A stretch of 64,000 nucleotides of DNA from Octopus sinensis (GCF_006345805.1 NC_043005.1:51584001-51648000); one strand, 5' to 3'; shown: positions 1 to 42,650, counted from the first letter of the stretch. Notes: generated by a model from the sequence alone, not told the origin. A program made the numbers and translations.

Positions 1-236
1 TCAGCCCTAGAACCTGACTATATTGATGTTGGAAAGATGGAGAGCAAAGTGAACACCCTGGGCAGATATAAACTCTGAATGCAGTGGAATGTAATTAAAT
101 ATTTGGAATGCCGTTTTTTTATTCTTTTTTTCTTTTTCTTTTTTTTTTTTTTTTGGATTGGGTGAACTCTGTCAATTCTGCCATGTATCTTCTCTCTTTT
201 AGAGTAATACTAATATTTGTGAATGATTCTTTTAAG

Positions 237-405
237 GTATTTATGGTGCTGGCTGCCTCATCACTGAAGGATGCCGTGGAGAAGGTGGCTATCTGATCAA
301 TGGTGAAGGTGAACGTTTTATGGAACGCTATGCTCCAAATGCCAAAGATCTTGCTTCTCGTGATGTCGTATCTCGTGCCATGACAATTGAAATTCGTGAA
401 GGCAG
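237..405 (+). CDS. SDHA: SDHA coding exon (first in window; upstream exons lie outside)
   Basis: AG acceptor 235-236, GTGAGT donor at 406. Translates (G)[55 protein letters not shown](R), the capping-domain segment of SDHA/FrdA. 169 nt. Confidence 0.97.
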
Positions 406-622
406 GTGAGTATTCTATGTTCAGATGTTTTTTCATACATGTTGTCAGCAGTGAGTATAGACAGAGGCACAACTTGTGGTAAAGACATTTACTTTGCAAC
501 GTTGTACTTTATGGTTTGATTCTACCATTTGGTAGAATCAAAGGTAAGTGTATACTACTACAGCCTTGGTTTGCAGACATGGTTACTTGGTCAAGAAGTT
601 CATTTTGCAAATTATTTCAGAT

Positions 623-960
623 GGTGCTGGTGCCACATAAAAATCACTGGTGATGGTACCACATAAAAATCACTGGTGATGGTACCACATAAAAATCACT
701 GGTGATGGTACCACATAAAAAGCATTGGTGATGGTACCACATAAAAAGCACTGGTGATGGTGTCATGTAAAAAGCACTGGTGATGGTACCACATAAAAAG
801 CACTGGTGATGGTACCATATAAAAAGCACTGGTGATGGTGTCATGTAAAAAGCACTGGTGCTGGTACCACATAAAAAGCACTGGTGATAGTACCATATAA
901 AAAGCACTGGTGATGGTGTCATGTAAAAAGCACTGGTGCTGGTACCACATAAAAAGCACC
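623..960 (+). repeat. 26-bp minisatellite, 13 units, inside a SINE
   Basis: Unit GGTGATGGTACCACATAAAAAGCACT. The last unit runs directly into the SINE segment CACTACAC...TTGGCGTTAGGAAGG...(GAT)n seen at 12350-12520 and 14620-14790. Confidence 0.92.
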
Positions 961-2214
961 CACTACACCCAAAAAAGTGATTGGCGTTAGGAAGGCAGCC
1001 AGCTGTAAGAAACCAAGCCAAAACAGATTATGGAACCTGGTGTGACTCCTGGCCTTGCCAGCTCCTGTCAGACTGTGCGACCTATGCCAGCTTAGAAAAC
1101 ATGTTAAATGATGATGTGTTCAATCACACTGCGTGACACCATCAGCAAATATCTAATACCATAGTCTTGACTCAACCAAAGCTTTTTTCAGTAAAATTTG
1201 GTAAACCAGAGCTGTGGTTGACTTGATCTCTTGACTAGTTTAGCGCCACCATGTGGTACTTGGATATCTTTAGTGGATTCTATTCTGCTGCAAACATTCA
1301 GGCTGGGTTTCTGGTCTCAGAATGACTTCCTTCTTCTTATCAGTGATGGGGCCTGACCACTGATTATCGTTTTATCTTTCACTTGTTTCAGTCATTAGTC
1401 TGTGGCCCTGCTGGGGCACTGCTTTGAGGAATGAATCGACCCCAGTGCTAATATTTTTTAAGTTCGGTACTTATTCTATCAGTCTCTTTTTGCCAAAACA
1501 CAGATGCAGACACCACACACATACACAAGACTATAATAGAAGGCACTTGCCCAAGGTGCCACGCAGTGAGATTGAATCCAGAACCATGTGGTTGGGAAGC
1601 AAATTTCTTACCATACAGCTACGCCAAAAAAAAAAAAAAAAAAAAGTCGGAGTGGGCGGCAAGTATGTCTTTATGGTTAAGTTTTGTGGGGTTCAGAGCT
1701 CAATACCAATGTGTGGTGTATAGGGTAAGAGACTTGAACCATATCTTTGGGTCGACCAAATCCTTGAAGTGTCTCTTAGACGAAATTAGGCCTCCGATTT
1801 CTCACTTAACTTCTAATGTTCTTGTGATTAAATCGCAATGGACGACTAAATATGTTTATCATTAAAGAACAAAAATAAATCATATTTTCAGATATTTTTA
1901 TCTGTATAAGGGAGACTACTCTAATCCTCTAATTTTAAAGTTACCTCCCTTGTTTTCGTTATTATGTTCTTGAGTCATTGATGAGCTTTCTACTCAGTTA
2001 ATTGGCATATTGGATTCACTTTCATCGTCATTTAACGTCCATGTTCCAAACTGGCATGGGTTGGACGATTTGACAGGGAGCCATTAATCCAAGAACTGCA
2101 TTGTGCTCCAGTGTCTGCTTTGGCATTTTTTTGTGCAATTAAATGCCATTCCCAATGCCTTTACTGTGTGCACCTGGCTGCCTTTTTTTTTTGTCCCATG
2201 AGCACTAATGAGGC

Positions 2215-2750
2215 CTATGCAGCTTTGCAAGTCTACAAATCCGAGGAAAGAGTGAGGGATGCTGCGCCCTTATGTTAGAAAGAGGTTAAGAGATGAGAAA
2301 AGGGGTTGGCGTATATTAGGTTCTTGTAGCGGAGCTACATGGCAACTTGCATTTACGAGAAAGAGAATGATTTGATGGTATCTCCAAAGAGCTAGATGAG
2401 GTGTACAGGTGGTACCACAGATAGGAAGAGTTGTAGCGGGCAGGGGTTTGCAAGAGTGTAGGTGAGGGAGAATTAGGAGAGAAGAAGGTCAGCAACATCT
2501 GTAAAAATTGTGAAAGGTTAAGAGAAAAGGGGTGAAGAGTTGTGGAGGTGAGATGGATGCTAGAGGGCTGCTAGTAACAGGGTGATAATGATGGGAGTGG
2601 AGATGACGTGTTTGGGTAGGCTGTGGGAGTAAAATGGAGATACCGACGGGCATAGTGCAAGAATAGAGATTAATTTGGTGGTCTAAGTGGGGTGCATCTG
2701 ATGGGATGGTCACTGGAAAAAAAACAGAAAGAGTAGGAGGGGGTTAGTCA
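2215..2750 (-). mobile_element. Degenerate non-LTR retrotransposon (CR1/L2-like) 3' fragment, tentative
   Basis: Non-SINE purine-rich tract. The minus strand loosely resembles the 3' end of CR1/L2 ORF2; no intact motif. Confidence 0.3.
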
Positions 2751-2924
2751 CTGCTCAGATGACTTTCATAATAAGTTTGTTTGACCAGGTTTAACTCTTC
2801 AACATTCAAACCAGCTATATTTGGCCCAAAGATTCTACCTATTTTATGTTCAAACTAGGCAGATCCTGCCTTTCACACCTATTCTACAATGCCAGTCTAA
2901 AAATCTCAAAGCTGTAAAATAATA

Positions 2925-3135
2925 TTTTCTACTTTAGGCACAAGGCCCGAAATTTTTTTTGTGGGTGGCAGTCGATTAGATCGATCCCAGTATGCAACTA
3001 GTACTTAATTTATCGACTCCAAAAGGATGAAAGGCAAAGTCGACCTCAGCGGAATTTGAACTCAGAACGTAAAGACAGATGAAATACTGCTAAACCTTTT
3101 GCCTGGCTTACTAACGTTTCTGCCAGCTCGCCACC
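2925..3135 (-). mobile_element. SINE family A copy (tRNA-like head with GAGTTCAAATTCC B box; GCCTTTCATCCTTTCGGGGTCGATAAA core)
   Basis: Reverse complement of the family at 17727, 20374, 30035, 31172, 46938, 47692, 55660, 55870, 60735, 62280 and 63690. Confidence 0.8.
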
Positions 3136-3867
3136 AGATAAGCATTACATTTGACAGGATTAATGTCTCAACAATTACAGGCTAACAAATTTCAATGTTA
3201 GTTTTTTTTTTTTTTTTTTTTTTCTTGTTTTATGCAGCCTACTCAAAAAGTATCTACCCAACTTGTGTCATTTTGTAGTGTTTTGTAGCTATCGAGGCAT
3301 ATTTTCCTGTCTCTGAAACAAACTTTGGTAATGAAATATCTGTAAGCTGACTGCAGTGGAAGCAAAGAGCATCTCCATTCTCTGCATTGCTTCCTAAATT
3401 GCAGTAGTCATACTTACTTTCTGCCCTATTGCCAAGACTTGCTGAATTAACTTCATAGAGTCCCATGTATTACACTGGAGGCACATGGCCTAGTGGTTAG
3501 GGTGTTAGACTCATGATTGTAAGTTTTGATTCCTGGACTGGGCAATGCATTGTGTTCTTAAGCAAAACACTTCATTTCACATTGCTCCAGTTCTCTTAGT
3601 AATACTGTGATGGACCGGTGTCCCATCCAGGTGGGGAATTTATGTGCCATGCAAACTGGGAAACCGGCCTTTATGAGTTGGTGTGACTTGAGGGGATAAC
3701 TTTACCTTTACTTTTTTACCTATATTTCACAGCCTATTTTTATTTTTTGTAGGTTAGATATTTTGTTAGTGAGGGAATGATGTTTGTGGTAGTACATGCA
3801 AAAGAAAAAAATGGTTTTTTAAAACTAACATCTTGTGTCACTTCTTTTTTTCTTCCCATCTTACTAG

Positions 3868-4063
3868 GGGTGTTGGTCCTGATAAAGACCATGTTTATCT
3901 ACAGCTTTCTCACTTGCCTGCGGAAGTTCTTCACTCTCGTTTACCAGGAATCTCTGAAACTGCCATGATATTTGCCGGTGTTGATGTCACTCGTGAACCT
4001 ATTCCTGTCTTACCCACTGTGCATTACAACATGGGTGGTGTCCCAACCAACTATAGGGGACAG
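3868..4063 (+). CDS. SDHA: SDHA coding exon
   Basis: TAG acceptor, GT donor at 4064. (R)[65 protein letters not shown] with the conserved HYNMGG motif. 196 nt, phase-compatible with the previous exon. Confidence 0.97.
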
Positions 4064-4974
4064 GTTAGTGATTATTTTTACGTATTTATATTTTTTGTTA
4101 TTTTTTTATCTCTCTCTTTTTTTTTTTTTTAAACCTTTACTTGTTTCACTCATTGGATTGCTGCCATGTGAGGGGCACCACCTTGAAGGCCTTAGTCAGA
4201 CAAATTGACTCTAGTACCTATTTTTTTAAGAGTCTGGTACTTATTTTGTGGAACTGCTATATCACAGGGATACAGACAAACACAACCTATCCCTACTTAA
4301 TAGGCCTCTGCACAGTTTCTGTCTATCAAATTTACTCACAATACATTGGTTAGCCTGGGGCTATAGTAGAAGTCACGTACCCATGGTTCCTTGCAATGGG
4401 ATTGAACCTGATATCACATGACTGCAATGCAAGCTTCTTAACTACACAGCCATGCCCATACCTAAAAATTTATGACCCAGGAAGATGGTCCATTATTGCT
4501 TGCTGATCATAATTGTTGAATAGTCCAATATCATCAAGTATTTAGGTTTTAGGAATTAATGTGCCTTCCAGGAGCAATTTTTCTTTCATACATTTTGTAT
4601 AATAAGAAATGAGAATGAATGCTAAACTCACAAACCTCTGTTATTCGGAAAGAAATTATTCATGAGATTTTATGCTTCTTAGAGAGCCAAAGTTTAATAT
4701 GAACATGAAATTCTATTTGTATTTCATCATTTCATCATAACCTCCACTTTTCCATACTTGCATGGGTTTGACAGAGCTCATTGAGGCAGCTCATCTGTGG
4801 CTGGATGCCCTTCCTGTCACCAACCCTGACCTGTTTCCATGGTCAGACACGCTCTCTCCTAGTATATTGGGAATGAGTGACACTGAAGGATATGGACAGG
4901 GACACGTGCACACGTATTTAGGGCAGTGCTCCAGCGTGGCTGTAGTCAAATGACTGAAACAAGTAAAAGAATAT

Positions 4975-5200
4975 ATGTCATCATTTAACAGCCATTGTCT
5001 ATGCTGGTATGGGTTGGACAGTTTGACCGGAGCTGGCAAGCTGGAGAGTTGCACCAGACTCCAGTCTGATTTGGCATGGTTTCTACTGCTGGATGCCCTT
5101 TCTAATGTCAACCACATTACGGTGTGTATTGGGTGCTTTTACATGGCACCACACAGGCGCTTCTGTGCGACGCTGTACGGGTGCTCTTATGTGGCACTGC
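4975..5200 (-). mobile_element. SINE 3' module with (GAT)n tail (family D)
   Basis: Same module on + at 960-1115, 10545-10700, 12280-12520, 14570-14790 and on - at 2030-2200 and 4750-4830. Confidence 0.75.
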
Positions 5201-5289
5201 CAGAAGTGCTTTACACCACTAGCAGGATTGGTCTTAACACATCTGCTGTGGGGTATGGGCCTTCTTGAGTACAGCCTGTATGTATGTGG

Positions 5290-5575
5290 GCGTGGGCACA
5301 ATGTCCCAGTGGTTAGGGCAGCAGACTCGTGGTTTCAATTCCCAGACTGGGCGTTGTGAGTGTTTATTGAGTGAAAACACCTAAAGCTCCATGAGGCTCC
5401 GGCAGGGATGGGGTGATCCCTGCTGTACTCTTTTGCCACAACTTTCTCTTGCTCTTTCTTCTGTTGGCCTGCTTGCTTAGCCAGCGGGGTGGCGTCATTT
5501 GAAGGCTAAAACAATGCAAAGTGCATTGTGACCAGTGATGTGTAGCAACATCTGATAGCCTGGTCAGTTTTCGTG
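5290..5575 (+). mobile_element. SINE family C (tRNA-Arg-like head)
   Basis: Head TG(G/T)CCCAGTGGTTAGGGCAGC..GGTTTC(G/A)ATTCCC shared with 30644, 33865, 39685 and 47336; body shared with 56155-56330. Confidence 0.75.
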
Positions 5576-5584
5576 ATCACAGTG

Positions 5585-5668
<84 letters not shown>

Positions 5669-5950
5669 CATGTATGATGGGCTCTTTCAGTTTCTGTCTA
5701 CCAAATCCATTCACAAGGCTTTGGTTTGTTTGGGGCCAGAGCACAAGACAATTGCTCAAGGTACCTCACAATGGTACTGAACCTGGAACTATGTGGTTGG
5801 AAAGCAAACATCTTACCACACAGCCATGCTTGTACCTATCTTGAATTATTTTCATTTTGTGTTCTGTGCTTTGTATTTCATATTTTACCATTAAAAAATT
5901 TGTGTGTGTTATATGTTTATGTTATTTGTTTATGCTTTTTCCATAAATAG

Positions 5951-6151
5951 GTTATTACATACAGACCAGAAACTGGAGATGTTGTTGTTCCTGGGCTCTA
6001 CGCATGTGGAGAAGCCGCTTGCGCATCTGTCCATGGAGCTAACCGCCTTGGAGCTAATTCATTGCTGGATCTGGTTGTGTTTGGTAGAGCATGTGCCAAC
6101 ACCATAGCTGAAGAGAATAAACCAGGAGAAACCATTGGAAAGATTTCTCAG
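5951..6151 (+). CDS. SDHA: SDHA coding exon
   Basis: TAG acceptor, GT donor at 6152. [67 protein letters not shown] with the FAD-binding [13 protein letters not shown] motif. 201 nt, phase 0/0. Confidence 0.96.
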
Positions 6152-6789
6152 GTGTGTTGAGTTTTCGCTTGCATTAACAGTTTTTGTCTTTAGTTGTTTT
6201 GCTCAGGTCAGCCCTGTTCGAGTACCATAATCAGATGTCTTTCAGTTATGACCACCCTTTTTTACTTTCAAACATTGTGCATCCAAGCTGCAATATAATA
6301 CAGGATTAATTCAAAACAATGTGAATAAATATGTGTTACATTAGACAAAATAATATGAATGCTAAAGAGTCAAAGACATGTCATTTGATGGCAGTTTGGC
6401 TGCTATTTTTAGCAGGTCAAATGAAAGAAGAAAGATCTGTCTTGTTGGAAACTAGGTTTTTAAATATGATTTAAATTATTAATATTGAACTAAGTACCAG
6501 TGAATTTGAACTTCTGGTCCATCTGTTGGTAGAAGTTTTGTACTTGGTCATTCTGGATATTTTCTCATTTATTTTCTATAAAAACTTCAGTCTTTAATTG
6601 TTTGCTTGTTACTTTTTAAATTCTGGATTTGCTTAGTTAATTCATATGTAGGTTATAAAAATTTAATCTTAGTAACCTTGCTTACTAATGAAATGCGACA
6701 TGGTCTAAAAATTTTGTCTTTTACACAAGTATATACGGTAGTTGAAATTATTGCATTAATTATTGATTTTCTTCAAATTATTTTTGCAG

Positions 6790-6882
6790 AATGCTGGTGA
6801 AGCGTCTGTTGCCAATCTTGACAAACTGCGCCATGCCAATGGAAGTATCTCAACAGCAGACTTGCGTCTGAAGATGCAAAAG
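6790..6882 (+). CDS. SDHA: SDHA coding exon
   Basis: CAG acceptor, GTATGA donor. [31 protein letters not shown]. 93 nt. Confidence 0.95.
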
Positions 6883-7083
6883 GTATGAATATGAATTTGT
6901 TCCGGGTCAGCTGTGACTCAGCAGACGTATGATTAAAGGCTTTCCGGTCATGACTTTCTTGTCTACCTATAAGTACATTGTATATTAAGGACTACATTAT
7001 CCATTGTGTCCCTCCCTTTTGATGATGTTAGGGTGTAATTTGATGGATGTTTGGTTAGTATTTTTAACAGTGACTATGTAGAG

Positions 7084-7434
7084 CAGTGGTTCTCAACTGG
7101 GGTTCATATGGCCCCTGAGGGTCCATATAATATTTTGGGGTGGTTTGTAAATTGAGGATCCATAATAGTATTTTAAGGGAGCCTGAAAAAATTTAGATGT
7201 GTATATTTGTGTGTATTGCAAAGAAAAGAAAAAAAAAAAGCAGCTAGTTTTCTTCCTCTAACATTTTACATAGTTTAACCTGCACACAAGTTAATGCATG
7301 GAAAACAGAACAAGGAATTTTGAAAGAACTTTCTATAAAATCAGTTTTTAAACAGAATGGCTAGGGGGGGGGGCACCTGAATAAACTAATAATCAAAGGG
7401 TTCTATAAATAAAAAAAATGGTTGAGAAACCCTG
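7084..7434. mobile_element. hAT (Charlie-like) non-autonomous element
   Basis: TIRs CAGTGGTTCTCAAC (7084) and GTTGAGAAACCCTG (to 7434). 8-bp flanks ATGTAGAG / GTGCAGAG match 6 of 8, consistent with a decayed TSD. Confidence 0.8.
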
Positions 7435-8890
7435 GTGCAGAGGATCTCTTGTTTGCTCTTTGAAATATGGTTATTGTTTGTAGAGTAGCAGGTTTCCCTA
7501 CTGTCTCCTATAGTATAGTTCTATAGAATGTAGTAGATCTTCATACACTCTCCTTCAGTCTCTGTAGATAAGAGTAGACATCTCTCATTAAAGGAAATGC
7601 ATCCTTCATATAGTCTTCTGTATAGGTGCAGAAATGGCTGTGTGGTAAGAAGTTTGTTTCCCAACCACATAGTTTCAGGTTCAGTCCCACTGTTTAGCAC
7701 CTTCAGCAAGTGTCTTCTATACCCATGGGCTGTCCAACGCTTTTTGAGTGTATTTGGTTGACGGAAACTAAAAGAAGCCCATCATATATACACGTATGTA
7801 TGTATTGTCCACAGATGAAATCCAGAGATTCTCCATAAAGACAGCACTTACTTGTGCTCAAAAGATTCAAGCGTAGATTTCGATGTGTTTACAGGGCATC
7901 GATTCCGCATGGTGAAGAAAGGCTATAAGAGAGATCCAGTTGTGCAGAAATAGAGGCAATTACCTCGATACCTTACCTGAAAACCTGCTGTGGTAAAAAT
8001 ATTGGCAAAGAAGGAACTGTAGTTCTAGTCTAAATACTTGCAACAATGAACCTTTCTTAAAAGCATTTAAGGACCAAATGATGGGGTTAAACCAGACAGT
8101 ATGTTAAACCTTCCACCCATGTGCTAAATATTGCATTTAGCTTTGAGACTTGTGTGAGATTTTCTATAATATGTGGCAACCTTATAAGGGGCCAGTGAAT
8201 GTAGATGATCTTGTAGTGGTGATTTGAAACGGAATTGCTAGGTAGCCAAGCAGATGTCACAATCAAACTACTGTAGTTTCAAATGATTAATCTATTATGT
8301 GACCAGTCAGCGTCAAACCATTGCGTGACTTGGTTTTCTGGAACTTTCTCATTGTTCCCTTAATAAAGAGGGTTTTTGGTGGTAATCGTGGACTGTTGAG
8401 GCAGCCATGTGTTGTCTCCATTTTCATCACCACATCCAGCCAATTAAGATAGATGGCAGATTGTAGACAAAAATTTTCATCTCCATGAATATAGCACAAT
8501 TACTTTCCAGTTGTGATAAGCCAGCCACAGATTGCTGTATCAGTTCACTTGTCACAGATCCCAAGCAGTACGTTTCTCCCAGTATGTAATCATTGTTGTT
8601 AGTATTTTGTAAAAGATCAACACCGAAAAATAAAAAAACTATGTGCAGTAATAAAGTTTGTGTGTGTTAAGCTTCATATCAGCTCTGATCAATGAAAACC
8701 AACTTCTATTTCAGGCATTGTGTATCCAGAACCACAACCACAATGTCCAATGTAATTCTTTTTTTTTTTGTGCAAGATTGTAGAGTGCGATTTCAAGGAA
8801 ATTTAATTGACTGGTATTTTTAAGAGAGTGAGCTACCATGAAGCATCTTCCTTGTTTGGGAGTCATTCATATTGGTGTTCTGTGTTTCAG

Positions 8891-8989
8891 GCCATGCAGG
8901 GTCATGCTGCAGTATTCCGAGAAGGTGATACTCTGAAGAAAGGTTGTGATGTGATGGATGGCATTTATACTGAAATGAATGATCTAAAA
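8891..8989 (+). CDS. SDHA: SDHA coding exon
   Basis: CAG acceptor, GTGAGT donor at 8990. AMQGHAAVFREGDTLKKGCDVMDGIYTEMNDLK. 99 nt. Confidence 0.94.
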
Positions 8990-11497
8990 GTGAGTATTTT
9001 TCAGCTTATTATTTGTTCTGTTCTGTTTTTTTTTGTTCAGCATGCCTCTAGGTGTGGCAGTTGAAGTAACTGAGATGATTTGCTATGGGTGGATTAAATA
9101 TTGGGTTCCCAGATCATGCAGTGTAAGTTTTAATCATGTATCATCTCAGATCCCAAGTTGTAGCTCTGATGGTGTCTTTTGCATTCGACAAGCCTCTCCC
9201 TTTTTTCTCTTGGTAAATAGAGCCTGTCAGTATTACTTTTAGAGTAAGAAGGCAGTGAGTTGGCAGAATCATTACTGCACTGGAAAAACTGCTTAGTGGC
9301 ATTTCTTCTGACTGTACATTCTGAGTTCAAATGTCACCAGGGTCGATTTTTAGCTTTTATCCTTCCAGGGTCAATAAAATAAGTACCAGTTGAACATTGG
9401 GTTCATGTAATCAACTCATCTCCTTGCCCCAAATTTCTGGCATTGTGCCAAAATTTGAAAGAATTTGATGCCAGTATTCCTTTTAGAGTGGTGTGTGTTA
9501 TGCATTTTGAACAACCTTCTAAGTTTCTTGTACCTAATTGCTGTAGCTTTGTCTTTCCACTTCAAAAAAAAAAAAAATCAACAAAACACCAGAGTATCTC
9601 AACAGTGACATTGTCCTCATATAGATCACCTTAATGACTTGGTTTCCATTAAAAGGTGACAATCTGGCAGAATTGTTAGTATTCTGAACAGCAGCATTTC
9701 TTCTGGTTTTATGTTGTGAGTACAAATTCCACCCAGGTTAATTTTACCTTTCATCCTTTCGGAATCAGTAAATTAAATACCTATGAAGAACTGGGGTTGT
9801 GATGTAATTGAATCGCCTCCTCCCAATCAAAATTTGGGCCTTGTACCTTCAGTAAAAATATAAATATATATTCCCTCCTTTTAGTTTAGTTTCAAGCACC
9901 TCTGTAACCTTTCTCTTGTCTTCTTTGGAAGCCTCCCTCATTTTCTTTTCCATTACCTCACCTCACCATCTTGCAGTACCTCAAGGTATATGTCTCTTTT
10001 GTTCTCATTCAGTGATCGAATAATATTGTCTTATAATATGGATTAGATATGTCTTGCAGTCTCTCATCCCTTGTTGCAAACTTTATCATTGGCCATACAC
10101 TAGCAACAGACAAATAAATCCACTCAACTCCATCGCTCTGTGTTGTTGTTGAGTCCCAAGTCAGCCTCTGATGAACTAGATCTATGATTAAAGACATTCT
10201 AACCATGGCCATTTCATCTTTCCTGATAGCATTATCTAATATGTCCATCCATTTTTTAAAGATATTAGGGTAGGGTTTGAGAGCCATTTAACTGTTGTTT
10301 CTTGTAAGTCAAACATGTAGAGTGTTCTCTCATTGGCTTGCTTTGATTCTCTTACTAGTAATATTTATTTGCATATCTCACTATCTGTCTCCCCTAAATA
10401 CAAGTAACCACCTATCTCCTCTACAACATGAATTTGCTCTGCACTAACATCTTCTCTCACATCTTAACCGTGCCCATCTTACATAAGAATGCACCCCTCC
10501 CATTCCTCAGGTTTTGTAGATTTACAAGCTGTGTGACAACCTCAGTGGTGCCAGTGGCATGTAAAAAGCACCCTGGACTCACTGTCAAGTGGTTGGTACT
10601 AGGATGGAGATCCAGTCGTAGAAACCATGCCAGAACAAACAGTAAAACATGATACAGTCTTTGGATCAATCTAATCTTTATCAAACTGCATGGAACATTG
10701 ATGTTGAATGATGATGATGTCTGTATTTCATAAGTTTTATCCTCTTTACTCAATCATTAAAGAAAATAGTTTTGCAGTAGAGAATCTCTTCACTTCAGCC
10801 AGTCAATGACCAACTGTTCCTGGGGCCCCAATGCCTTTTGGCACCTTGTGGATCAGAGAGAACATTCTAAAATTTCTTCCTGACTAAAAGTTTCAAAATG
10901 ATGGATGATGGTGATACACATTTATTAGGATTAGTTATTTGATCATCTGGAAATGTTTCTAAAGCCTCAAGTCTTCTCGGAGAAGGCAGCTAAGAAAATC
11001 TCTTGCTAACCAGTGCGCACCTGATGATACAGGTAACTTGGTAACTGATCATATACAATTATAATATCCATGTTTATGTGCACATGCACACACACACACA
11101 CACACATGTACCCACTCATTTGGTGGCAGGGTATACACATCTGGGATTGGATGGAGGTGGTAGGGAATTCATTGTCGAAGGTTGGTGATGGTGGTGGCTG
11201 AGTAGTTGGTGTTTCTTTTGCATTTTCCATTAAACATCAGCCGTCTTTCTGATTACAGGTATGGCTTGTATTTATTGTGATGTTACCACAAATACATGTA
11301 TCGATACAATTATATTTCTCTTAGTTGTACCCATGGAAATTCCATGGATATTTTGAAAACACACACTCTCTCTCTTTCACTTTATGTATATCTGTCTCTC
11401 TCACTCTCTTTCTTTCACAGCTTTGCTAGCATTTGCATTTTCGCATGTCTGTGTAGGAGTAACTTGTTATAATCAAAATAATTATTTTCTTCTCCAG

Positions 11498-11641
11498 GTG
11501 AGTGATCGTGGATTGGTTTGGAATACAGATCTCGTTGAGACTTTAGAACTACAAAATCTCATGTTAAATGCTGTGCAGGCTATCCATTCTGCCGAAAATA
11601 GGAAAGAATCTCGTGGGGCTCATGCCAGGGAGGACTTTAAG
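11498..11641 (+). CDS. SDHA: SDHA coding exon with non-canonical GC donor
   Basis: TTCTTCTCCAG acceptor. [48 protein letters not shown], ending AAG|GCAAGT. 144 nt, in frame with the next exon only if the GC at 11642 is the donor. Confidence 0.93.
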
Positions 11642-11882
11642 GCAAGTACTGTTGAACATTGTAAATTACTCTTTCTTGTTCTTCTTGTTAAAAGATAATG
11701 TTTTTTATCATTAAAAAAGAGCCCAGTTCGTGATTGTTGTGGTTAAGACATTTGTTTTGCAATCACTTGGTTTTAGGTTCAGTCCCACTGTATGGCACCT
11801 TGGGCAAATGTCTTCTATAGGCCCTGGGCCAGTCCATGCCTTGCAAATGAATTTGGTAGGCGTAAACTGTGTAGCAACTAGT

Positions 11883-11913
<31 letters not shown>

Positions 11914-12864
11914 GTATATACTAAAAATTAATATAATCAGCTAGGTGCAGTGTAATACCATAAAGGAAAGGAAAAATTTAATTCTCACTAAATGTACTGG
12001 GGGTACCAAAGCACCTACATTGTTAGAAATAAGAGTTCAGCACCCTCAGCCACATTTAGTGACGATTAAATGTGTGTGTGTGTGTGTCCCACCCCGACTT
12101 GGATAACTGGTGTTTGTTTATGTTCTTATAACAAAGTGGTTTGGCAAAAGAGATTGCTGGAATAAGCAGCTTTCTTAAAAAATAGTATTGGTATTGATTT
12201 GTTCCAGTGCCCTAGCATGGCTGCAGTCCAATGAGTGAAACAAGTAAAAGATAAAAGATGTGTGTGGGGTGTGTGTGTGTTGGCACGTAAAAAGCACCAT
12301 CCGATCGTGGCCATTTGCCAGCTTCGTCTGGCACCTGTGCCGGTGGCACATAAAAAGCACCCACTACACTCACGGAGTGGTTGGCATTAGGAAGGGCATC
12401 CAGCTGTAGAAACACTGCCAGATCAGACTGGGCTTGATGCAGCCTTCTGGCTTCCCAGACCCCAGTTGAACCGTCCAACCCATGCTAGCATGGAAAGCGG
12501 ACGTTAAATGATGATGATGATATATATATATATATATCTATACACACACATATAAATATGGCCTAGTGGTTAGTGTTGCAGTCATGATCATGACTTCAAT
12601 TCCTAGACCGAGTGGTGCATTGTGTTCTTGAGCAAAACACTTCATCTCACGCTGCTTTTTAATCACTTCAACACCTGACGTGTGGTACACTGTGCGCCTG
12701 TTCAGTCAACATTGATTTGATACAGAGAATGAGCTAATGTGCGGCATGGGCATTTGATCACTACAAACAAATCATTTGTGCAGGTCATTTGACCAAAGCT
12801 GAATGCTCATACATCATCTTTGAGAGAGTCCATCATATATGTGTAATATAAATTGGACATGGAC

Positions 12865-13394
12865 GATCGTTGTATTCTTTCTTGTCTTGAGGTTCACAGC
12901 CAAACGGTTGGGTGGATTTGTGTGAAAAATGGCACACATGTGGAGAGGGTGCATAGATTGGAATGCGGTTTGTATTTTTTTTCTTGCCCCCATACTTACC
13001 GAGAAAATCGCTTAAAACTTTTCTAATGGAATTCCCCTGTTTGTTCCGCCATTAAAACAAGTTGCTCACACAGCCAGCATATACCATTTTGCTAGCAACA
13101 AGGGGAGTACAGGATGACAGTTAACCAAAACTTTCGCTATGCTGTCTCTCTTTCACCTCTTTGTGGGGTTAATAACCTTAATCTTTAGTTACAGTTTCTC
13201 ATTCGAACTACATAATAGGCAGAGTTGTCGGATTAAGACAGTAGGGTGTTTTGAGGGAGATTTGGCTGCTATTTCTACCAGGTCTAGCTACCATGTACAG
13301 GTCTGAACTTAATTTTCATTCACGTATGCCTAACCGAAAACGATCACAGCCACATCATCCAAACAGACCAGGTGAAACCGGGCTTAGCTGCTAG
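12865..13394 (+). mobile_element. Non-autonomous Helitron-like element (3' end clear, 5' end approximate)
   Basis: GC-rich hairpin CCAGG-TGAAA-CCGGG (13368-13382), then CTAG (13391-13394), then T: the canonical Helitron 3' terminus. Confidence 0.6.
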
Positions 13395-13421
<27 letters not shown>

Positions 13422-13426
<5 letters not shown>

Positions 13427-13725
13427 GAAATGAAGAAAATGCTGACAAAATAATTTAAGTAATTTAATTAGGTGAAAGTTCTTTTTACCAGTTGCACATT
13501 TGTTATGCTTATCAAAAGATGTTTTTTTAAGAGAGATAGTTACTTTCTGATAGATTTTTTCCTCTTATCTGGAAAGATAAGAGGAAAAAATCTATCAGAA
13601 AGTAACTCTATCTCTCTTAAAAAAACATCTTTTGATAAGCATAACAAATGCGCAACCGGTAAAAAGAACTTTCACCTAATTAAATTACTTAAATTATTTT
13701 GTCAGCATTTTCTTCATTTCCTTTT
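13422..13725. repeat. Near-perfect long palindrome (149/151-bp arms, GGAA loop) in an SDHA intron
   Basis: 13422-13570 is the reverse complement of 13575-13725 apart from 2 substitutions and a 2-nt indel. Flanked by (TA)n. Confidence 0.95.
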
Positions 13726-13892
13726 TTATATATCACAACTCGTGTTCCACATCTCCTTTTTTAAATATATATATATATATATTGATATGGAGTTTGATTA
13801 CTTGAAATTCTCAACTTCTTTTACACCTTAACTTGTGTATGAAATGAAAGTTTTTTTTATTATTTCTGTTACTCTCCATTTTCACTGAGCAG

Positions 13893-14000
13893 GACCGAGT
13901 GGATGAATACGACTACAGTAAATCTACTGAAGGACAAGAGAAGAAATCTGATCATTGGAGAAAACATACCATCAGTTATTGTGATCCTGAAACAGGGAAA
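13893..14000 (+). CDS. SDHA: SDHA coding exon
   Basis: CAG acceptor, GTAAGT donor at 14001. [36 protein letters not shown]. 108 nt. Confidence 0.94.
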
Positions 14001-14239
14001 GTAAGTTGACCTTTATTTTGGACATCACAATCCTACATTGTTTTCCTGCTCCTTTTCCTTTCAAGTTCAGTGAGAAAGGATGTTAAGGGATACTATTTTT
14101 GTACTAAGAGAGTAAAATGAGTTAACCCTTTAAAACTATGAAATTAAATTTCTTGGTTATTTCTGTGATGACGTTGAATTGTTAAGTAGCAGCCAAAAAA
14201 TGAAATTTTCTGCAAGTCACAATACTGCAATAAACTTGA

Positions 14240-14790
14240 CAGATGAGGCTGTGTGGTAAGAAGCTTGCTTCCCAACCACATGGTTACAGGTTCAGTTCCA
14301 CTGCATGGCACTGTGGGTAAGTGTCTTCTACTATAGTCTTGTGAGTGGATTTGGTAGATGGAAACTGAAAGAAGCCTGTCGTGTGTGTGTTTCTTTCTTG
14401 ATGTCTGTGTCCCCCACCCCCCACCGCTTGACAACTGGTGTTGGTGTCCCGTAACTTAATGGTTTGGTGAAAAGAGACCGATAGAATAAGTACCAGGCTT
14501 ACAAAAAATAAGTCCTGGGGTCGATTTGTTCGATTAAAAGCCTAAAAAGTACTATTTGAGTGTGGCTGCTGCCAGTACCACCTGACTGGCCCTTGTGCCG
14601 GTGGCACGTAAAAGCACCCAATACACTCTCGGAGTGATTGGCGTTAGGAAGGGCATCCAGTTGTAGAAACTCTGCCAGATCAGATTGGAGTCTGGTGCAG
14701 CCTTCTGGTTCGTCAGACCTCAGTCAAATCGTCCAACCCATGCTAGCATGGAAAGCGGACATTAAACGATGATGATGATGATGATGATGA
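14240..14790 (+). mobile_element. SINE family B copy followed by a family D module
   Basis: Head GCTGTGTGGTAAGAAGCTTGCTTCCCAACCACATGG..GGTTCAGTTCC, body GAGTGGATTTGGTAGA.GGAAACTGAAAGAAGCC, then a (GAT)n-tailed module. Confidence 0.8.
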
Positions 14791-15005
14791 TTACTTCCAT
14801 TTTAACAAACTGAAATTTTACTAAAGGGTTTCCTCAGTTAAGATATATACATACATGTATACATTCACACTCACATAAATATGCACATACCTACATACAG
14901 CATTAAACAGTCAATATTAGCGTTTTCAATCTATATATGACTTATGGTTTTTATTTTCCAAAATTATATTTTTACATTCTTTTTTTGTTTGTTTCATTTC
15001 GAAAG

Positions 15006-15092
15006 GTTGAACTTATCTACAGACCTGTAATTGATGACACACTAAAACCAGAAGACTGTCCATATGTCAAGCCAGCAATTCGTTCTTATTAA
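15006..15092 (+). CDS. SDHA: SDHA last coding exon
   Basis: AAG acceptor after a pyrimidine tract. VELIYRPVIDDTLKPEDCPYVKPAIRSY-TAA with the typical SDHA C-terminus (PAIRSY). 87 nt including stop. Confidence 0.95.
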   Translation, partial: VELIYRPVIDDTLKPEDCPYVKPAIRSY

Positions 15093-21353: not shown

Positions 21354-21731
21354 CATCACACACCATCATTACACATCCACATTACACCTTTAAGATCGGT
21401 GAACCAGTTAGAGACCCGCTGGATCTCTCTCGGCATACCAGCAAACCACAAAATTGCACCAGCCAGCATCACAACTACCCGTCATATGTATGTATGAATG
21501 TATGTTTGTGTGTGTGTGTGTGTGTATTTGTCCCACCACCAGCATTGCTTGACAACCGATGTTGGTGCGTTTGTATCCCTGTAATTTAGCTGTTCAGCAG
21601 AAGAGACTGATAGAATAAGCACCAGGCTTACAGGGAATAAGTCCAGGGGCCAATTTCTTCGATTAAAGGGTGACCACCGTGAAATGACTGAAACAAGTAA
21701 AAGAATAGCAGAAAAACGCTTGCCCCTCCTT

Positions 21732-22117
21732 GGAATTTTCCAGGAAGTACCCATCATCCTCGGACTTTTCCAGGAAGTTCTCCCCCTCCGGAATTTTCCA
21801 GTCCTTTATCCTCTCCTCGGACTTTTCCAGGAAGTCCCGTTCACCCCTCCTCAAACTTTTCCAGGAAGTCCTTCATCCCCTTTCTTGGACTTTTCCAGGA
21901 AGTTATCCTCCCTCCACGGACTTTTCCAGAAGTCCCACTAACCCTCCTCAGATTTTTCCTGGAAGTACTACCCACCACTCCGTGGTCTTTTCCAGGAAGT
22001 TCTTCTTCCCCCTCCATGAACTTTTCTAGGAAATCCTTCCTCCTCTCCTTGGACTTTTCCAGGAAGTTCTTCCACCCATTCTTCTCCTTTCCCCCTCCTC
22101 GAACTTTTTCAGGAAAT
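21732..22117 (+). repeat. Degenerate repeat/spacer array, 12 cores GGACTTTTCCAGGAAGT
   Basis: Cores at 21732, 21762, 21790, 21819, 21853, 21887, 21918, 21950, 21984, 22018, 22051 and 22101, separated by variable pyrimidine-rich linkers. Confidence 0.9.
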
Positions 22118-23051
22118 CCTTCCTCCCCTCCTTTTCCTTTAGAGTCTTCAATTAATATATGTTGGATATTCGCAAATAACATAATATAATGTGCTCACAC
22201 TCTTATGCACGCACATACACATATGGATTGATACAATTGTCTCATTTGTATGATAAATTTCACTTTTATCAATAAATACATATATCGATTAGCTCGATTT
22301 GCTTTAATTGGTCTATCTGATTTATTTAAACGCTTAGTAATCGTGGATAATTTAAGGAAGGTGTCCGATCACTGATGAAATCCCACCAGAGAATTGAAAC
22401 CAGACTGCGTAATCTCATTTGTTTTCCCTCCATGTAGATGCATGGAAAGACGTCTGGGTGGTAGATTATTGGTTTCAAATTTTGGCACAAGTCCAGCAAG
22501 ATTAGGGGAGGGAGTAAGTCGATTGCAGCGACTCCAGTATTTGGCTGTTACTTGTTTTATCGACCCAGAAAAGATAAAAGACAAAGTAGACCTCGGCGGA
22601 ATTTGAACACAGAACACCGCCTTAAAAATATTACTTTCAAGGTTTGGTAGAAGGCCAGCTATTTTGTGGAAATGATAGGTCGATTAGATCGACACCAGTG
22701 CTCAATTGGTACTTATTTTATCGACCGTGAAAGAATGAAAGGTAAAGTCGATCTCAATGGAATTTGAACTCGGAACGTAAAGACGGACGAAATGTTGCCA
22801 AGCATTTTGCCCAGCGTGCTAACGATTCTGCCAAGTAGAATTTTTAACTTCAGGATTCTTTCCCTAACATTTATGACTATAGAGGAGGATAGAAACCAAA
22901 TTGAAAATAACGGTAAGTGGAGACGTTTAAGTATCCCGAAGTCCTATTCGCGAATGATGGAAAGCAAGAAGATGAATTGGATACCAGAATTGCTGATGCT
23001 GACAACAGTAATGTGCTAACCCCAGCATTCGATCCTTAGAAAAGAAGCGGT

Positions 23052-26040: not shown

Positions 26041-27314
26041 CGAGGGGCGTTCAATAAGTAATGCCCCTGACCCACTTCCCATAGCAGTAGAGCAACGAAA
26101 CTTGGCACAGTTATTAGTCTTTTTCTACATAGGAACCACCCAGAGTTACGCATTTCTCCCATTGTTTGATGTAGCTCTGGAGACCGTTTTTGTAGAAGAC
26201 CCCAGCTTGGTCCTCCAACCTGAACGTGACTTCAGAAATCAAGGCTGCATTATCTGGGAAACGCTTTCCTTTCAAAAACAACTTCATGACTGGGAAGAGG
26301 TGTAAATCAGAGGGTGCAAGGTCAGGAAAGTAGGAGGATGGGGGAAGGAGTTCATAGCCATACGCCTGTGCTTCTGATCTGGCGACAAGCGAGTTGTGGA
26401 CCGGAGCGTTGTCCTGCAGGAGGAGGATGCCTTTGCTGATCTTGCCCCGCCTCTTGATTTTGATAACTTCTCTTAATTTCCTCAAAAGTGAAGCATAATA
26501 GGCTCCTACAATTGTGGTACCCTTTGCCAGGAAATCTGTCATCACTACTCCGTCCTGGTCCCAGAAGACTGTGAGCATGACCTTGCCAGAGGAGGGCTGC
26601 ACCCTTGCCTTCTTTGGAGGGGGTGAGTCACGGTGCTTCCACTGCATTGACTGGGCTTTGGTCTCTGGATCATAGTGATGGGCCCAGGCTTCATCCTGTG
26701 TAATCAGTCTTTTGAAAAATTTTGACTCATCTTCTTGGCACATCTCCAAATTCACCCTCGAGCACTCGACGCGTTCTTGCTTCTGGAAAGGCGTGAGCAA
26801 CCTGGGAATCCATCTGGCAGACACCTTTTGCATATGCAAATGGTCATGAATGATAGTTTCCACAGACCCGGTACTAATCTTGACCTCATGGGCTATTTGG
26901 CGAATAATTATGCGTCGATCTTCCAAAATGGCAGCCTCAACTTGACGGACAGATGCCTCATCAATGGCAGAAGGGGCGACCAGATCTGGGAGCTGTTTCC
27001 ACGGATTTCCGACCATGTTTGAATTCACGATGCCAGCGTTTTACAAGGTCATATGATGGGGCATCATCACCATAAGTTACTTTCATTTCATCAAAAGTCT
27101 CCCGTGGTGTGCGTCCTCTCAAATACAAAAACCGGATCACTGCTCGACACTCAACAGGCTCCATTTCACACTTGACTCGGTTCAAACACCTGTAAATCAG
27201 AAACCACAATTAATTCAGAGCTGTAATTTGCCACTTACTCTATAGAGATATAAATGATTGCACATGCAAACAACTGCAAGTGGGTCAGAGGCATTACTTA
27301 TTGAACGTCCCTCG
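26041..27314 (-). mobile_element. Full-length mariner transposon (1274 bp)
   Basis: TIRs CGAGGGGCGTTCAATAAGTAATGCCCCTGACCCACT and the reverse complement ending at 27314 (2 mismatches). TA TSDs at 26039-40 and 27315-16. Confidence 0.96.
26114..27164 (-). pseudogene. Mariner DD34D transposase with one frameshift
   Basis: ATG at 27164 (MEPVECRAVIRFLYL...RSGRP), frameshift in the G run at 26973-26976, then PSAIDE...WIPRLL...ITQDEAW...QDNAPVH-(34 aa)-DLAPSD...YVEKD-stop. Resembles irritans-subfamily (Himar1-like) transposases. Confidence 0.93.
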
Positions 27315-34553: not shown

Positions 34554-35433
34554 TTAGAGGTATTCCTTGGCTTGAGGGATGAAGCATTGGTGGAACCAAT
34601 TCAAAGTTAGACTTTTGGTAATCCAGACCTTAGGGTTGTGCATCAAGTGGACAAGAAGCAGTATTTTATTTTTATTTTTGAAGACCCTCGGTTTCGCGGA
34701 CTTGTAGAAAAGTCCTGATTTCATCATGAAGCCAGCAGCATTGTAACACATAATTAGTACTACTCTGTCCTTCTGTGCCTTAAGTCCTGGGGCTCTGGAT
34801 TCGTCCTTCATGATGTAAGTTCTAGAAGGCATCTTCTTCCAGAACAAGCTAGTCTCGTCCATACTGAAAACCCTTTCCGGCTTGTATCCCTTTTCTTCGA
34901 TAATCTGCCTGAAGATGTCGAGGTACGGTACTTCGATGCTGTCTCTCCAGGTAGGGAAGCACACTTTATTTTAAACCGTTTCTGGAAACGGTCAAACCTT
35001 TCCTTGCTGGTTCGAACATCTTCGGGCTTCGGTGATGTCAGTGGTCTTGGTTGCAGTTCTTCGGTGCTTTCTGCCCCGTCTCATCGGTTGCGCGGATGAT
35101 GTTACCGCTGAAGTTGTTTTTCTTTTTGCAGTCACTGATCCACAATGCCAAGGCAGATTCAATCCTGACGAAGTGCCTATTTCTCACTATCTTTTTGGCA
35201 CTTTCACAGAAACTTACTGCTATGATAGTCCTGCTCGCCACCTCGTTCTCCTTTATGTAGCGTATGGTGCTTTTGTTGACAACATAATAGCGACCTACTG
35301 CAGCATAACTGTTACCTTCCCGGAACATATCCAGCAGTTGTGCCTTCTCATGGAGCATCATAACCTTGTTCTGGCGCTTAGGTTCACTGCCAGAATCCTC
35401 AGAAGATGTAAGGAGTTTGGGCTTTAATAACAT
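34554..35433 (-). pseudogene. Tigger/pogo-family transposase remnant (CENP-B-type HTH plus start of DDE_1)
   Basis: PKRQNKVMMLHEKAQLLDMFREGNSYAAVGRYYVVNKSTIRYIK...IESALALWI (HTH), then after a frameshift GYKPERVFSMDETSLFWKKMPSRTYI...KAQKDRV...NAAG...WFHQCFIPQ. Truncated. Confidence 0.9.
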
Positions 35434-41015: not shown

Positions 41016-41908
41016 CCCTCCTATTCAACATTTTTTTACAACCACCTCCACAACCCTCACTATCACCAACACCATCACCATTATCTTTATCATCACGATC
41101 ATACATGATCGTGATCAGTATCATCATCAAAACATCACCAAAATCACCACCACCACCACCACCACCACCACCATCAGCATCATCACCATCATCTGCCCCA
41201 ATACTATTTATTCTCACATCAACTAAGGTTGTACTATTTATTCATCAATTTCATGTCATCACTATCATCGTTACTATTAATCATCATCATCATCATCATC
41301 ACCACCGCCACCGCCACCATCATCATCATCATCATCATCATCACCACCATCCACCCACACCACCATCATATCATCATCATCATCATCATCACCACCACCA
41401 CCTCCCACCATCATCATCATCATCATCATCTCATCATCAACCACCACCACCATCATCATCATCACCACCACCACCCCATCATCATCATCATCATCATCAT
41501 CACCACCACCACCACCACCCATCATCATCATCATCATCATCTTCATCACCACCACCACCATCCATCATCACCACCACCCACCACCACCATCATCATCATC
41601 ATCATCATCACCACCACCACCAACCACCATCATCCATCATCATCATCATCTTCATCATCACACCACCACCATCATCATCACCACCGCCACCCGCCCCATC
41701 ATCATCATCATCATCATCATCACCACCACCACCACCACCATCCATCATCATCATCATCATCTTCATCACCACCACCACCATCATCATCATCACCACACCA
41801 CACCACCATCATCATCATCACATCACATCACTGCCACCACCACCACCACCGCCATCATCATCATCAATCATCATCATCGACCACCACCTACCCCACCAAC
41901 CATTCCAC

Positions 41909-41943
<35 letters not shown>

Positions 41944-42137
41944 ATCACCACCACCACACACACCACCATCCACCACCACCACCATCCACATCATCATCAT
42001 CATCATCCATCATCATCATCACCACCACCACCACCAACCATCATCATCAAACCATACTCATCATCATATCATCATCACCACCACCACACACCATCATCAT
42101 CATCATCATCAGCTTCATCACATCACCACCACACCAC

Positions 42138-42169
<32 letters not shown>

Positions 42170-42616: not shown

Positions 42617-42650
<34 letters not shown>

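What the first reader, a model, noticed from the sequence alone, without database searches (positions are those of the whole stretch)
8984..11647. SDHA exon in a recursive-splicing configuration: it regenerates the upstream donor and ends in a GC donor
Seen: the upstream donor is CTAAAA|GTGAGT (8990). The next exon starts TTCTCCAG|GTGAGT (11498), so after ligation the junction again reads CTAAAA|GTGAGT, identical from -6 to +6. The exon's own donor is AAG|GCAAGT, and the exon is 144 nt (frame-preserving). Established: exons starting with a 5'SS motif (RS-exons) can be removed by re-splicing, which the exon junction complex normally represses. Inference: competition between the regenerated GT site and the GC site could toggle an in-frame 48-aa deletion that removes [12 protein letters not shown], probably inactivating complex II. 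This would be a possible built-in splicing switch on a core TCA/respiratory enzyme.
Basis: partly seen in the sequence, partly recalled or inferred. Interest (0 to 1): 0.7.

Follow-up and report, generated by a model that had tools for sequence, protein, structure and literature searches.

The report
Octopus SDHA exon with donor-like start
Exon 13 of the octopus succinate dehydrogenase (SDHA) gene does begin with a splice-donor-like GTGAGT and end in a rare GC donor, but related species change those letters freely and every transcript found keeps the exon, so it looks like an ordinary constitutive exon, not a built-in switch.

Summary
The sequence observation is correct. The window is Octopus sinensis chromosome CM016867.1, and bases 1-15092 hold SDHA exons 8-15.

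- **What is there.** Exon 12 ends CTAAAA|gtgagt. Exon 13 (11498-11641, 144 nt, phase 0/0) starts GTGAGT and ends AAG|gcaagt, a GC-AG intron. Exon 14 starts at 13893.
- **Gene model.** It reproduces the annotated O. sinensis and O. vulgaris proteins exactly. A cDNA contig from another Octopus taxon shows both junctions, with the exon included.
- **Switch idea not supported.**
  - The Val-Ser codons vary freely: GTGAGT only in Octopus, GTTAGC in Argonauta, GTTTCT in Sepia, and GTGTCG, GTGTCT and GTATCA in other molluscs.
  - The GC donor is older (Octopus plus Argonauta) and arose separately.
  - No protein or cDNA in hand lacks the exon.
  - Flanking introns are no better conserved than those of other exons.
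  - The "-6 to +6 identity" is really a 6-nt match, because the exonic half is the same exon by construction.
- **How common this is.** In human, 1.7-4.9% of annotated exons qualify as putative recursive-splicing exons, and most are constitutive and held in check by the exon junction complex.
- **Effect of skipping.** It would remove a segment that carries human disease residues R585 and R589, so the product would probably be non-functional.

Verdict: a real feature and a new member of a known kind, of low interest. RNA-seq junction counts remain untested.

The parts
237..405 (+). SDHA exon 8 (first exon inside the window)
   Evidence: tblastn mapping and exact spliced model; translation matches XP_029640684.1
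3868..4063 (+). SDHA exon 9
5951..6151 (+). SDHA exon 10 (also starts with GT: GTTATT)
6790..6882 (+). SDHA exon 11
8891..8989 (+). SDHA exon 12 (99 nt), ends ...GATCTAAAA
8990..11497 (+). Intron 12 (2508 nt), donor AAA|gtgagt, acceptor ttttcttctccag
11498..11641 (+). SDHA exon 13 (144 nt, phase 0/0). It encodes 48 aa of the helical domain and linker, including [13 protein letters not shown], and matches Pfam Succ_DH_flav_C
11498..11503 (+). GTGAGT = Val-Ser codons. After ligation to exon 12 the junction reads AAA|GTGAGT, a putative recursive 5' splice site
   Evidence: present in mature cDNA of a sibling taxon; not conserved outside Octopus
11642..11647 (+). GC donor of intron 13 (AAG|gcaagt), otherwise a full consensus match
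   Evidence: junction confirmed by cDNA L007; shared with Argonauta, GT in Sepia and other molluscs
11642..13892 (+). Intron 13 (2251 nt, GC-AG). It contains an O. sinensis-specific 320-nt palindrome at 13414-13733
13893..14000 (+). SDHA exon 14 (108 nt)
15006..15092 (+). SDHA exon 15 with TAA stop (starts GTTGAA)

Best explanation
This is the ordinary, constitutively included exon 13 of Octopus sinensis SDHA.

Two unrelated, selectively near-neutral events gave it its look:
1. A GT-to-GC change in the intron-13 donor happened in an ancestor of Octopoda. The rest of the donor is a perfect consensus (AAG|GCAAGT), as is typical of GC-AG introns.
2. Later, in the Octopus lineage only, synonymous third-position changes turned the Val-Ser codons at the exon start into GTG AGT.

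After intron 12 is removed, the exon 12/13 junction therefore reads AAA|GTGAGT, a latent recursive 5' splice site.

Inferred, not shown: this site is kept silent in the usual way. The exon junction complex is deposited about 24 nt upstream of the new junction, and exon 13 is defined through its strong acceptor and its GC donor. At most a low level of in-frame, non-functional exon-13-skipped mRNA would arise as splicing noise. It is a latent liability of a known kind, not a regulatory device.
For: - **Gene model.** It is exact against two independent annotations. A cDNA contig from another Octopus taxon contains the exon with both junctions as predicted.
- **Isoforms.** All 16 cephalopod proteins and transcript products in the two 90% clusters keep the exon. 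The only O. vulgaris isoform difference is at the N-terminus.
- **Codons at the exon start.** GTGAGT in four Octopus taxa, GTTAGC in Argonauta, GTTTCT in Sepia pharaonis and three Sepia cDNA contigs, CTGTCA in another mollusc, GTGTCG in Aplysia, GTGTCT in Haliotis, GTATCA in Ylistrum. Val-Ser is kept but its codons drift freely.
- **Exon-wide drift.** Octopus and Argonauta differ at 27 of 48 third positions in this exon, including both third positions of the motif.
- **GC donor.** Present in Octopus and Argonauta; GT in Sepia, Aplysia, Haliotis, Ylistrum and L006. The two features therefore have separate origins.
- **Flanking introns.** Identity between O. sinensis and O. bimaculoides is 81% and 87% for exon 13, inside the 64-97% range of the other exons.
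- **Literature.** 1.7-4.9% of annotated human exons are putative RS-exons, mainly constitutive and repressed by the exon junction complex (PMC6224609). The same protective role is seen in Drosophila (PMC8184009). GC donors make up under 1% of donors and show enhanced consensus elsewhere (PMC2490688).
- **Function of the segment.** It aligns to residues 551-598 of pig and human SDHA. These include R585, R589, E564 and K598, where likely pathogenic human variants lie (PMC5441402). Loss of the segment would not yield a working enzyme.
Against: - No RNA-seq junction or lariat data could be examined, so low or condition-specific skipping is not excluded.
- The configuration fits the profile reported for EJC-sensitive RS-exons: a strong 3' splice site, a weak own 5' splice site, and a regenerated site identical over 12 nt to a donor that is really used.
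- The GC donor has persisted across the Octopus-Argonauta split even though a C-to-T change would strengthen it. This could hint at selection for a weak donor.
- Repression by the exon junction complex has never been tested in a cephalopod.
Confidence: 0.8

Rival explanations
1. Exon 13 is a physiological RS-exon. After exon 12-13 ligation, the regenerated AAA|GTGAGT competes with the weak GC donor for the exon-14 acceptor. Regulated relief of exon-junction-complex repression then toggles an in-frame 48-aa deletion that down-tunes complex II.
For: - The sequence configuration is real, and the regenerated site equals a used donor.
- The GC donor is the weakest donor in the gene.
- Some human RS-exons are alternatively spliced through incomplete repression (PMC6224609).
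- The skipped product stays in frame and so would escape nonsense-mediated decay.
Against: - The motif is absent in Argonauta, Sepia and all other molluscs examined, while the amino acids are kept.
- Conservation inside Octopus is expected by descent alone (4.7% third-position divergence).
- The two elements arose at different times.
- No skipped isoform appears in annotations or assembled transcripts.
- Flanking-intron conservation is not raised.
- The deleted segment carries residues that are essential in human SDHA, so the product would be a dead or interfering subunit rather than a tuned enzyme.
Confidence: 0.05
2. The GC donor alone is the regulatory element, as in C. elegans let-2. Its weakness would make exon 13 inclusion, or the choice of a nearby alternative donor, depend on trans-acting factors in Octopoda. 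The GTGAGT start would be incidental.
For: - The GC donor is shared by Octopus and Argonauta although their introns are otherwise unalignable.
- GC donors are enriched in alternatively spliced genes (PMC2490688).
- An in-frame GT lies 9 nt downstream, and the Argonauta gene model uses it.
Against: - Retention of one C across that distance is not improbable by chance.
- The +9 site is very poor: ATT|gttttt in Argonauta scores -4.0, and ACT|gttgaa in Octopus is no closer to the consensus (sequence, not scored).
- Octopus annotations and the cDNA use only the GC site.
- The rest of the GC donor is a perfect consensus, which is the usual compensation for constitutive use.
Confidence: 0.07
3. Artefact: the GC, or the GTGAGT, is an assembly or sequencing error, or the exon boundaries are mis-set.
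For: None found. The window does have one 100-N gap, but it is far away at 59819-59918.
Against: The same bases occur in three independent Octopus genome assemblies and in one transcript assembly. The GC also occurs in Argonauta. The boundaries reproduce the annotated proteins exactly.
Confidence: 0.01

Closest known systems
Annotated (constitutive) RS-exons repressed by the exon junction complex, e.g. human KPNA1 and CADM2 (Blazquez et al. 2018, PMC6224609; Boehm et al. 2018)
   Same: The exon starts with a 5' splice-site motif, so ligation to the previous exon rebuilds a donor. It has a strong acceptor and a weaker own donor, and it is included in the mRNA.
   Different: Use of the regenerated site, and dependence on the exon junction complex, are untested here. 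The organism is a cephalopod, where neither has been studied; no paper in the held library mentions both octopus and recursive splicing. The flanking introns are short (2.5 and 2.3 kb).
Drosophila Ubx microexons mI/mII and intronic ratchet points (Hatton et al. 1998; Duff et al. 2015; Joseph & Lai 2021, PMC8605326 and PMC8184009)
   Same: The (Y)n-CAG|GTGAGT arrangement at the intron-exon boundary is the ratchet-point motif. Exons can be removed by re-splicing at an exon-exon junction.
   Different: Drosophila sites serve very long introns and, from established knowledge, are strongly conserved. Here the introns are short and the motif is not conserved beyond one genus.
GC-AG introns (Burset 2000; Thanaraj & Clark 2001; Churbanov et al. 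2008, PMC2490688), including the regulated C. elegans let-2 donor
   Same: A GC donor with all other donor positions at consensus (AAG|GCAAGT), removed by the major spliceosome.
   Different: There is no evidence that this one is alternatively used. It is retained across Octopoda, whereas GC donors were poorly conserved between two nematode species.
Human SDHA transcript variant 3, lacking exons 12 and 13 (as described in PMC11863808)
   Same: An in-frame loss of the homologous coding segment of SDHA exists as an annotated transcript. It has no demonstrated protein or function.
   Different: In vertebrates intron 12 lies 13 nt further downstream. Fish exons 12 and 13 are 112 and 131 nt, against 99 and 144 nt in molluscs. 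Vertebrate exon 13 alone is therefore not frame-preserving and does not start with a donor motif.

Membership tests
Putative annotated RS-exon (Blazquez et al. 2018 definition) | The exon-exon junction (last 3 nt of the preceding exon plus first 6 nt of the exon) scores as a 5' splice site above the threshold that captures 90% of canonical donors | tested here: met
   AAA|GTGAGT is identical to the intron-12 donor. It scores 8.8 against a donor range of 6.0-12.8 in this gene, and against a pooled 10th percentile of 5.56. The scoring used a rough matrix, not MaxEntScan.
Functional RS-exon (recursive splicing actually used) | Use of the regenerated 5' splice site: skipped junction reads, lariats whose 5' end is the first exon base, or skipping on loss of the exon junction complex | not testable with these tools
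   No read-level RNA data were available. Indirectly, every annotated or assembled product keeps the exon.
Functional RS-exon (recursive splicing actually used) | The upstream intron is removed before the downstream intron | not testable with these tools
   This needs nascent-RNA or intermediate junction reads.
Selected (regulatory) recursive site | The 5' splice-site motif at the exon start is kept by purifying selection in related lineages despite synonymous freedom | tested here: not met
   Argonauta has GTTAGC, Sepia GTTTCT, Aplysia GTGTCG, Haliotis GTGTCT and Ylistrum GTATCA. Identity within Octopus is uninformative.
GC-AG (U2-type) intron | The intron starts GC and ends AG, and no alternative canonical reading gives the same mRNA | tested here: met
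   Intron 11642-13892 is gc...ag. Shifting the junction gives non-canonical ends. The protein and cDNA junctions match.
GC-AG (U2-type) intron | The remaining donor positions adhere closely to the consensus | tested here: met
   AAG|GCAAGT matches the consensus at -2, -1, +1 and +3 to +6.
SDHA / complex II flavoprotein subunit | FAD_binding_2 plus Succ_DH_flav_C domains and orthology to mitochondrial SDHA | tested here: met
   100% identity to the C-terminus of O. sinensis XP_029640684.1. Pfam domains PF00890 and PF02910 are present. E-values of 5e-59 to 3e-57 to pig, chicken and human SDHA structures.

The most novel reading that the evidence does not exclude
In the genus Octopus, the recently acquired GTGAGT start combined with the older weak GC donor makes SDHA exon 13 a truly EJC-dependent exon. 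Its partial recursive removal would vary with temperature, hypoxia or tissue, yielding an in-frame SDHA that lacks the end of the helical domain and lowers or interferes with complex II assembly. That would be a lineage-specific post-transcriptional brake on respiration.
Probability: 0.04. Interest if true: 0.6.

Novelty: new member of a known kind. Interest (0 to 1): 0.15.

Why it matters
As it stands, the finding matters little. It is one more constitutive exon that happens to rebuild a donor at its upstream junction, next to one more GC-AG intron. Both classes are well described.

Its modest uses are:
- a clean, datable example of how such configurations arise by synonymous drift (GC donor first in Octopoda, GTGAGT later in Octopus);
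- a ready-made test exon if anyone wants to ask whether the exon junction complex guards against re-splicing in lophotrochozoans, where this has not been examined;
- a flag that gene predictors which disallow GC donors mis-model this exon (see the Argonauta model).

If regulated skipping were shown, it would be a new way of tuning a core respiratory enzyme. Nothing here points that way.

Tried and rejected
- **First two protein searches.** Neither returned a cephalopod. Hit lengths never exceeded 1.75x the query length (205 aa for 117, 637 aa for 364), so I inferred a length cap. A third query, padded with 43 conserved upstream residues from P0126, recovered the Octopus, Argonauta and Sepia clusters.
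- **P0121.** It looked like a near-identical hit (808 bits) but is a chimeric, internally duplicated metatranscriptome protein. Discarded.
- **My own error on the active site.** I first assumed the exon carried the catalytic substrate-binding arginine. Alignment to solved structures showed instead that it covers residues 551-598, the end of the helical domain and the linker. I corrected this and used the human variants R585W, R589W/Q, E564K and K598N as evidence of importance.
- **My own error on the human isoform.** I recalled that a 48-aa-shorter human isoform might lack this exon. PMC11863808 says variant 2 lacks exon 4 and variant 3 lacks exons 12+13, and the fish gene explained why.
- **Other checks of the window.** Rfam and tRNA scans found nothing.
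- **Literature.** Searches for octopus plus recursive splicing, and for SDHA exon-13 skipping, gave nothing relevant.
- **Spliced mapping.** It failed for the Sepia and L006 annotated proteins near the 3' end, because those models deviate or are marked low quality. Those exons were mapped by tblastn instead.

Full report
**Where the window comes from and what gene it holds.**
- The first 16 kb of the window are 100% identical to Octopus sinensis assembly GCA_006345805.1, chromosome CM016867.1. By coordinate arithmetic the window is about CM016867.1:51,584,001-51,648,000.
- A tblastn probe and manual boundary setting place eight + strand exons at 237-405, 3868-4063, 5951-6151, 6790-6882, 8891-8989, 11498-11641, 13893-14000 and 15006-15092.
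- Their 364-aa translation is identical, residue for residue, to the C-terminus of O. sinensis XP_029640684.1 and O. vulgaris CAI9729113.1.
- An exact spliced mapping of the full protein shows 15 exons, so the exon in the finding is exon 13 of 15.

**Check of the observation.**
- Every statement about the sequence is correct. Exon 12 ends CTAAAA followed by gtgagt at 8990. Exon 13 follows ttctccag and starts GTGAGT at 11498. It is 144 nt, in phase 0 at both ends, and encodes [48 protein letters not shown]. Its donor is AAG|gcaagt, and exon 14 starts at 13893.
- GC-AG is the only canonical reading that yields the conserved protein.
- A 1690-nt intron-less Logan contig (SRR16213286) is 98.7% identical in CDS to O. 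bimaculoides and 97.9% to O. sinensis, so it is a further Octopus taxon. It reads ...CTAAAA|GTGAGTGAT... and ...TTTAAG|GACCGAGTG.... Both junctions are therefore used as predicted, and the donor-like motif sits in mature mRNA.

**Is it more than chance?**
- The "identity from -6 to +6" is half tautology. After ligation, the six exonic bases are exon 12's own end. The real coincidence is that six exon bases equal the consensus GTGAGT.
- Val-Ser at this position is common: 51 of 234 metazoan SDHA sequences fetched, and most molluscs.
- From this gene's codon usage (Val GTG+GTA 17/44; Ser AGT 6/36), GTRAGT is expected in about 6% of Val-Ser occurrences.
That is inside the range of the gene's real donors (6.0-12.8), and the GC donor is the lowest of them.
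- Across five mollusc lineages, 24 of 70 SDHA exons start with GT. Seven of 70 junctions pass a threshold that captures 90% of real donors, and the Octopus junction is the strongest.
- In human, 1.7-4.9% of all annotated exons meet the equivalent MaxEntScan criterion, and they are mainly constitutive (PMC6224609). GC donors are under 1% of donors (PMC2490688).
- Multiplying these rates over a genome with on the order of 10^5 internal exons (my rough figure, not computed here) gives tens of exons with both features by chance.

**Comparative test.** Genomic loci or cDNAs were fetched for ten further taxa, plus the source locus of the window itself. The homologous exon is 144 nt with the same boundaries in all the molluscs.

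| Taxon | First six bases | Exon 13 donor |
|---|---|---|
| O. sinensis, O. vulgaris, O. bimaculoides | GTGAGT | AAG\|gcaagt |
| Octopus cDNA (SRR16213286) | GTGAGT | no intron in cDNA; junction AAG\|GAC fits the GC donor |
| Argonauta | GTTAGC | CAG\|gcaagt |
| Sepia pharaonis | GTTTCT | CAG\|gtgagt |
| Three Sepia cDNA contigs | GTTTCT | no intron in cDNA |
| Mollusc L006 (GCA_032854445.2; Leu-Ser) | CTGTCA | gtaagc |
| Aplysia | GTGTCG | gttagt |
| Haliotis | GTGTCT | gtgagc |
| Ylistrum | GTATCA | gtttgt |

- Val-Ser is therefore kept while its codons take six different forms in six lineages.
- Within Octopus, identity is expected from descent alone. Third-position divergence between O. 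sinensis and O. bimaculoides is 32/675 (4.7%), and intron identity is about 86-91%.
- Against Argonauta, 27 of 48 third positions of this exon differ, including both in the motif.
- The GC donor is shared by Octopus and Argonauta but not Sepia, so it predates the GTGAGT. The two halves of the supposed device arose separately.

**Other tests of regulation.**
- The 150 nt of intron on each side of exon 13 are 81% and 87% identical between O. sinensis and O. bimaculoides. This lies within the 64-97% spread of the other 14 exons, so the signature typical of regulated cassette exons is absent.
- All members of the two cephalopod protein clusters keep the exon. These include eight Logan transcript products in the Sepia cluster. 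The two O. vulgaris isoforms differ only in the first 10 residues.

**What skipping would do.**
- The exon aligns to residues 551-598 of pig and human SDHA. This is the end of the helical domain and the linker to the C-terminal domain (domain limits from PMC11863808).
- The human variants E564K, R585W, R589W/Q and K598N, all classified likely pathogenic, fall in this segment (PMC5441402).
- An exon-13-less protein would very probably not be a working flavoprotein subunit. It would be in frame, so nonsense-mediated decay would not remove it. This argues that the regenerated site must be well silenced for the motif to have drifted in.

**Most likely mechanism.**
- Shown: the exon is included, the GC donor is used, the regenerated junction is present in mature mRNA, and the motif is not conserved.
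- Inferred from human and Drosophila work: after intron 12 is removed, the exon junction complex deposited upstream of the junction, together with prior definition of exon 13, blocks U1 and spliceosome assembly on AAA|GTGAGT. Exon 13 is then joined to exon 14 through its GC donor.
- The exon fits the described profile of EJC-sensitive RS-exons (strong acceptor, weak own donor). It is best filed as a putative annotated RS-exon, a latent liability rather than a switch.

**Relation to vertebrate SDHA.**
- The fish Larimichthys crocea also has 15 exons, and exons 3-9 have lengths identical to octopus. Its intron 12 lies 13 nt further downstream: exons 12 and 13 are 112 and 131 nt, against 99 and 144 nt in molluscs.
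- Vertebrate exon 13 alone is therefore not frame-preserving. This fits the report that the human in-frame variant lacks exons 12 and 13 together (PMC11863808). The phase-0 K|VS intron position is the mollusc arrangement.

**Limits.**
- No read-level RNA data were available, so low-level or conditional skipping is untested.
- Donor scoring used an approximate matrix.
- Only one non-Octopus octopod (Argonauta) could be examined.
- The genome-wide chance estimate rests on human figures.

**Verdict.** The "RS-exon configuration" label is acceptable as a sequence description, but the "built-in splicing switch" is not supported. This is a new member of a known kind, and interest is low.

Noticed in passing
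window 13414-13733 (inside intron 13, 159 nt upstream of the exon-14 acceptor): A 320-nt near-perfect palindrome: 126-nt arms at 98% complementarity plus inner arms, flanked by (TA)n. It folds as a hairpin of about 160 bp (-228 kcal/mol, z = -35). It is absent from the orthologous introns of O. vulgaris and O. bimaculoides, so it is a recent foldback or MITE-like insertion in O. sinensis. It could form long dsRNA in the pre-mRNA.
   Followed up: partly
L002 11864-11872 (Argonauta SDHA, GAB1599410.1): The deposited gene model adds three residues (ASI) by using a very poor donor, ATT|gttttt, 9 nt past the conserved CAG|gcaagt GC donor. This is probably an annotation artefact of a predictor that disallows GC donors.
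   Followed up: partly
window 622-959 (intron 8): A tandem array of 13 copies of a 26-nt unit (TGGTGATGGTACCACATAAAAAGCAC) with a 78-nt higher-order period.
   Followed up: no
window 21723-22140: An imperfect tandem array (periods of about 34, 67 and 97 nt) whose unit carries the palindromic core ACTTTTCCAGGAAGT. TTCCAGGAA fits the TTCN3GAA pattern of STAT-type sites. Function unknown.
   Followed up: no
window 26114-27028 (-): An uninterrupted 304-aa ORF matching the mariner-type Transposase_1 family (PF01359, E = 3e-23). It is a possibly intact mariner-like element downstream of SDHA.
   Followed up: partly
window 34554-35433 (-): Two adjacent ORF fragments matching DDE_1 (PF03184) and, just below its cutoff, the CENP-B N-terminal DNA-binding domain. 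This looks like a decayed pogo/Tigger-like transposon.
   Followed up: partly
window 41280-44902: A very long (about 3.6 kb, about 1200 copies) ATC trinucleotide microsatellite. The whole 28-64 kb stretch is dominated by di-, tri- and tetranucleotide repeats, and no convincing cellular gene was seen downstream of SDHA. An assembly gap of 100 N lies at 59819-59918.
   Followed up: no
window exons at 237, 5951, 11498, 15006; L014 (fish): Four of the eight SDHA exons in the window begin with GT (Val codons or a split Gly codon). Intron 12 lies 13 nt upstream of its vertebrate position, while exons 3-9 have lengths identical in octopus and fish. This is a case of intron-position shift in an otherwise very stable gene structure.
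   Followed up: partly
Exon 13 start, Octopoda versus other molluscs (L002, L003, L011-L013): The serine codon switched from the TCN family (Sepia, Aplysia, Haliotis, Ylistrum) to the AGY family (Octopus, Argonauta). That change needs two substitutions, or a non-serine intermediate.
   Followed up: no
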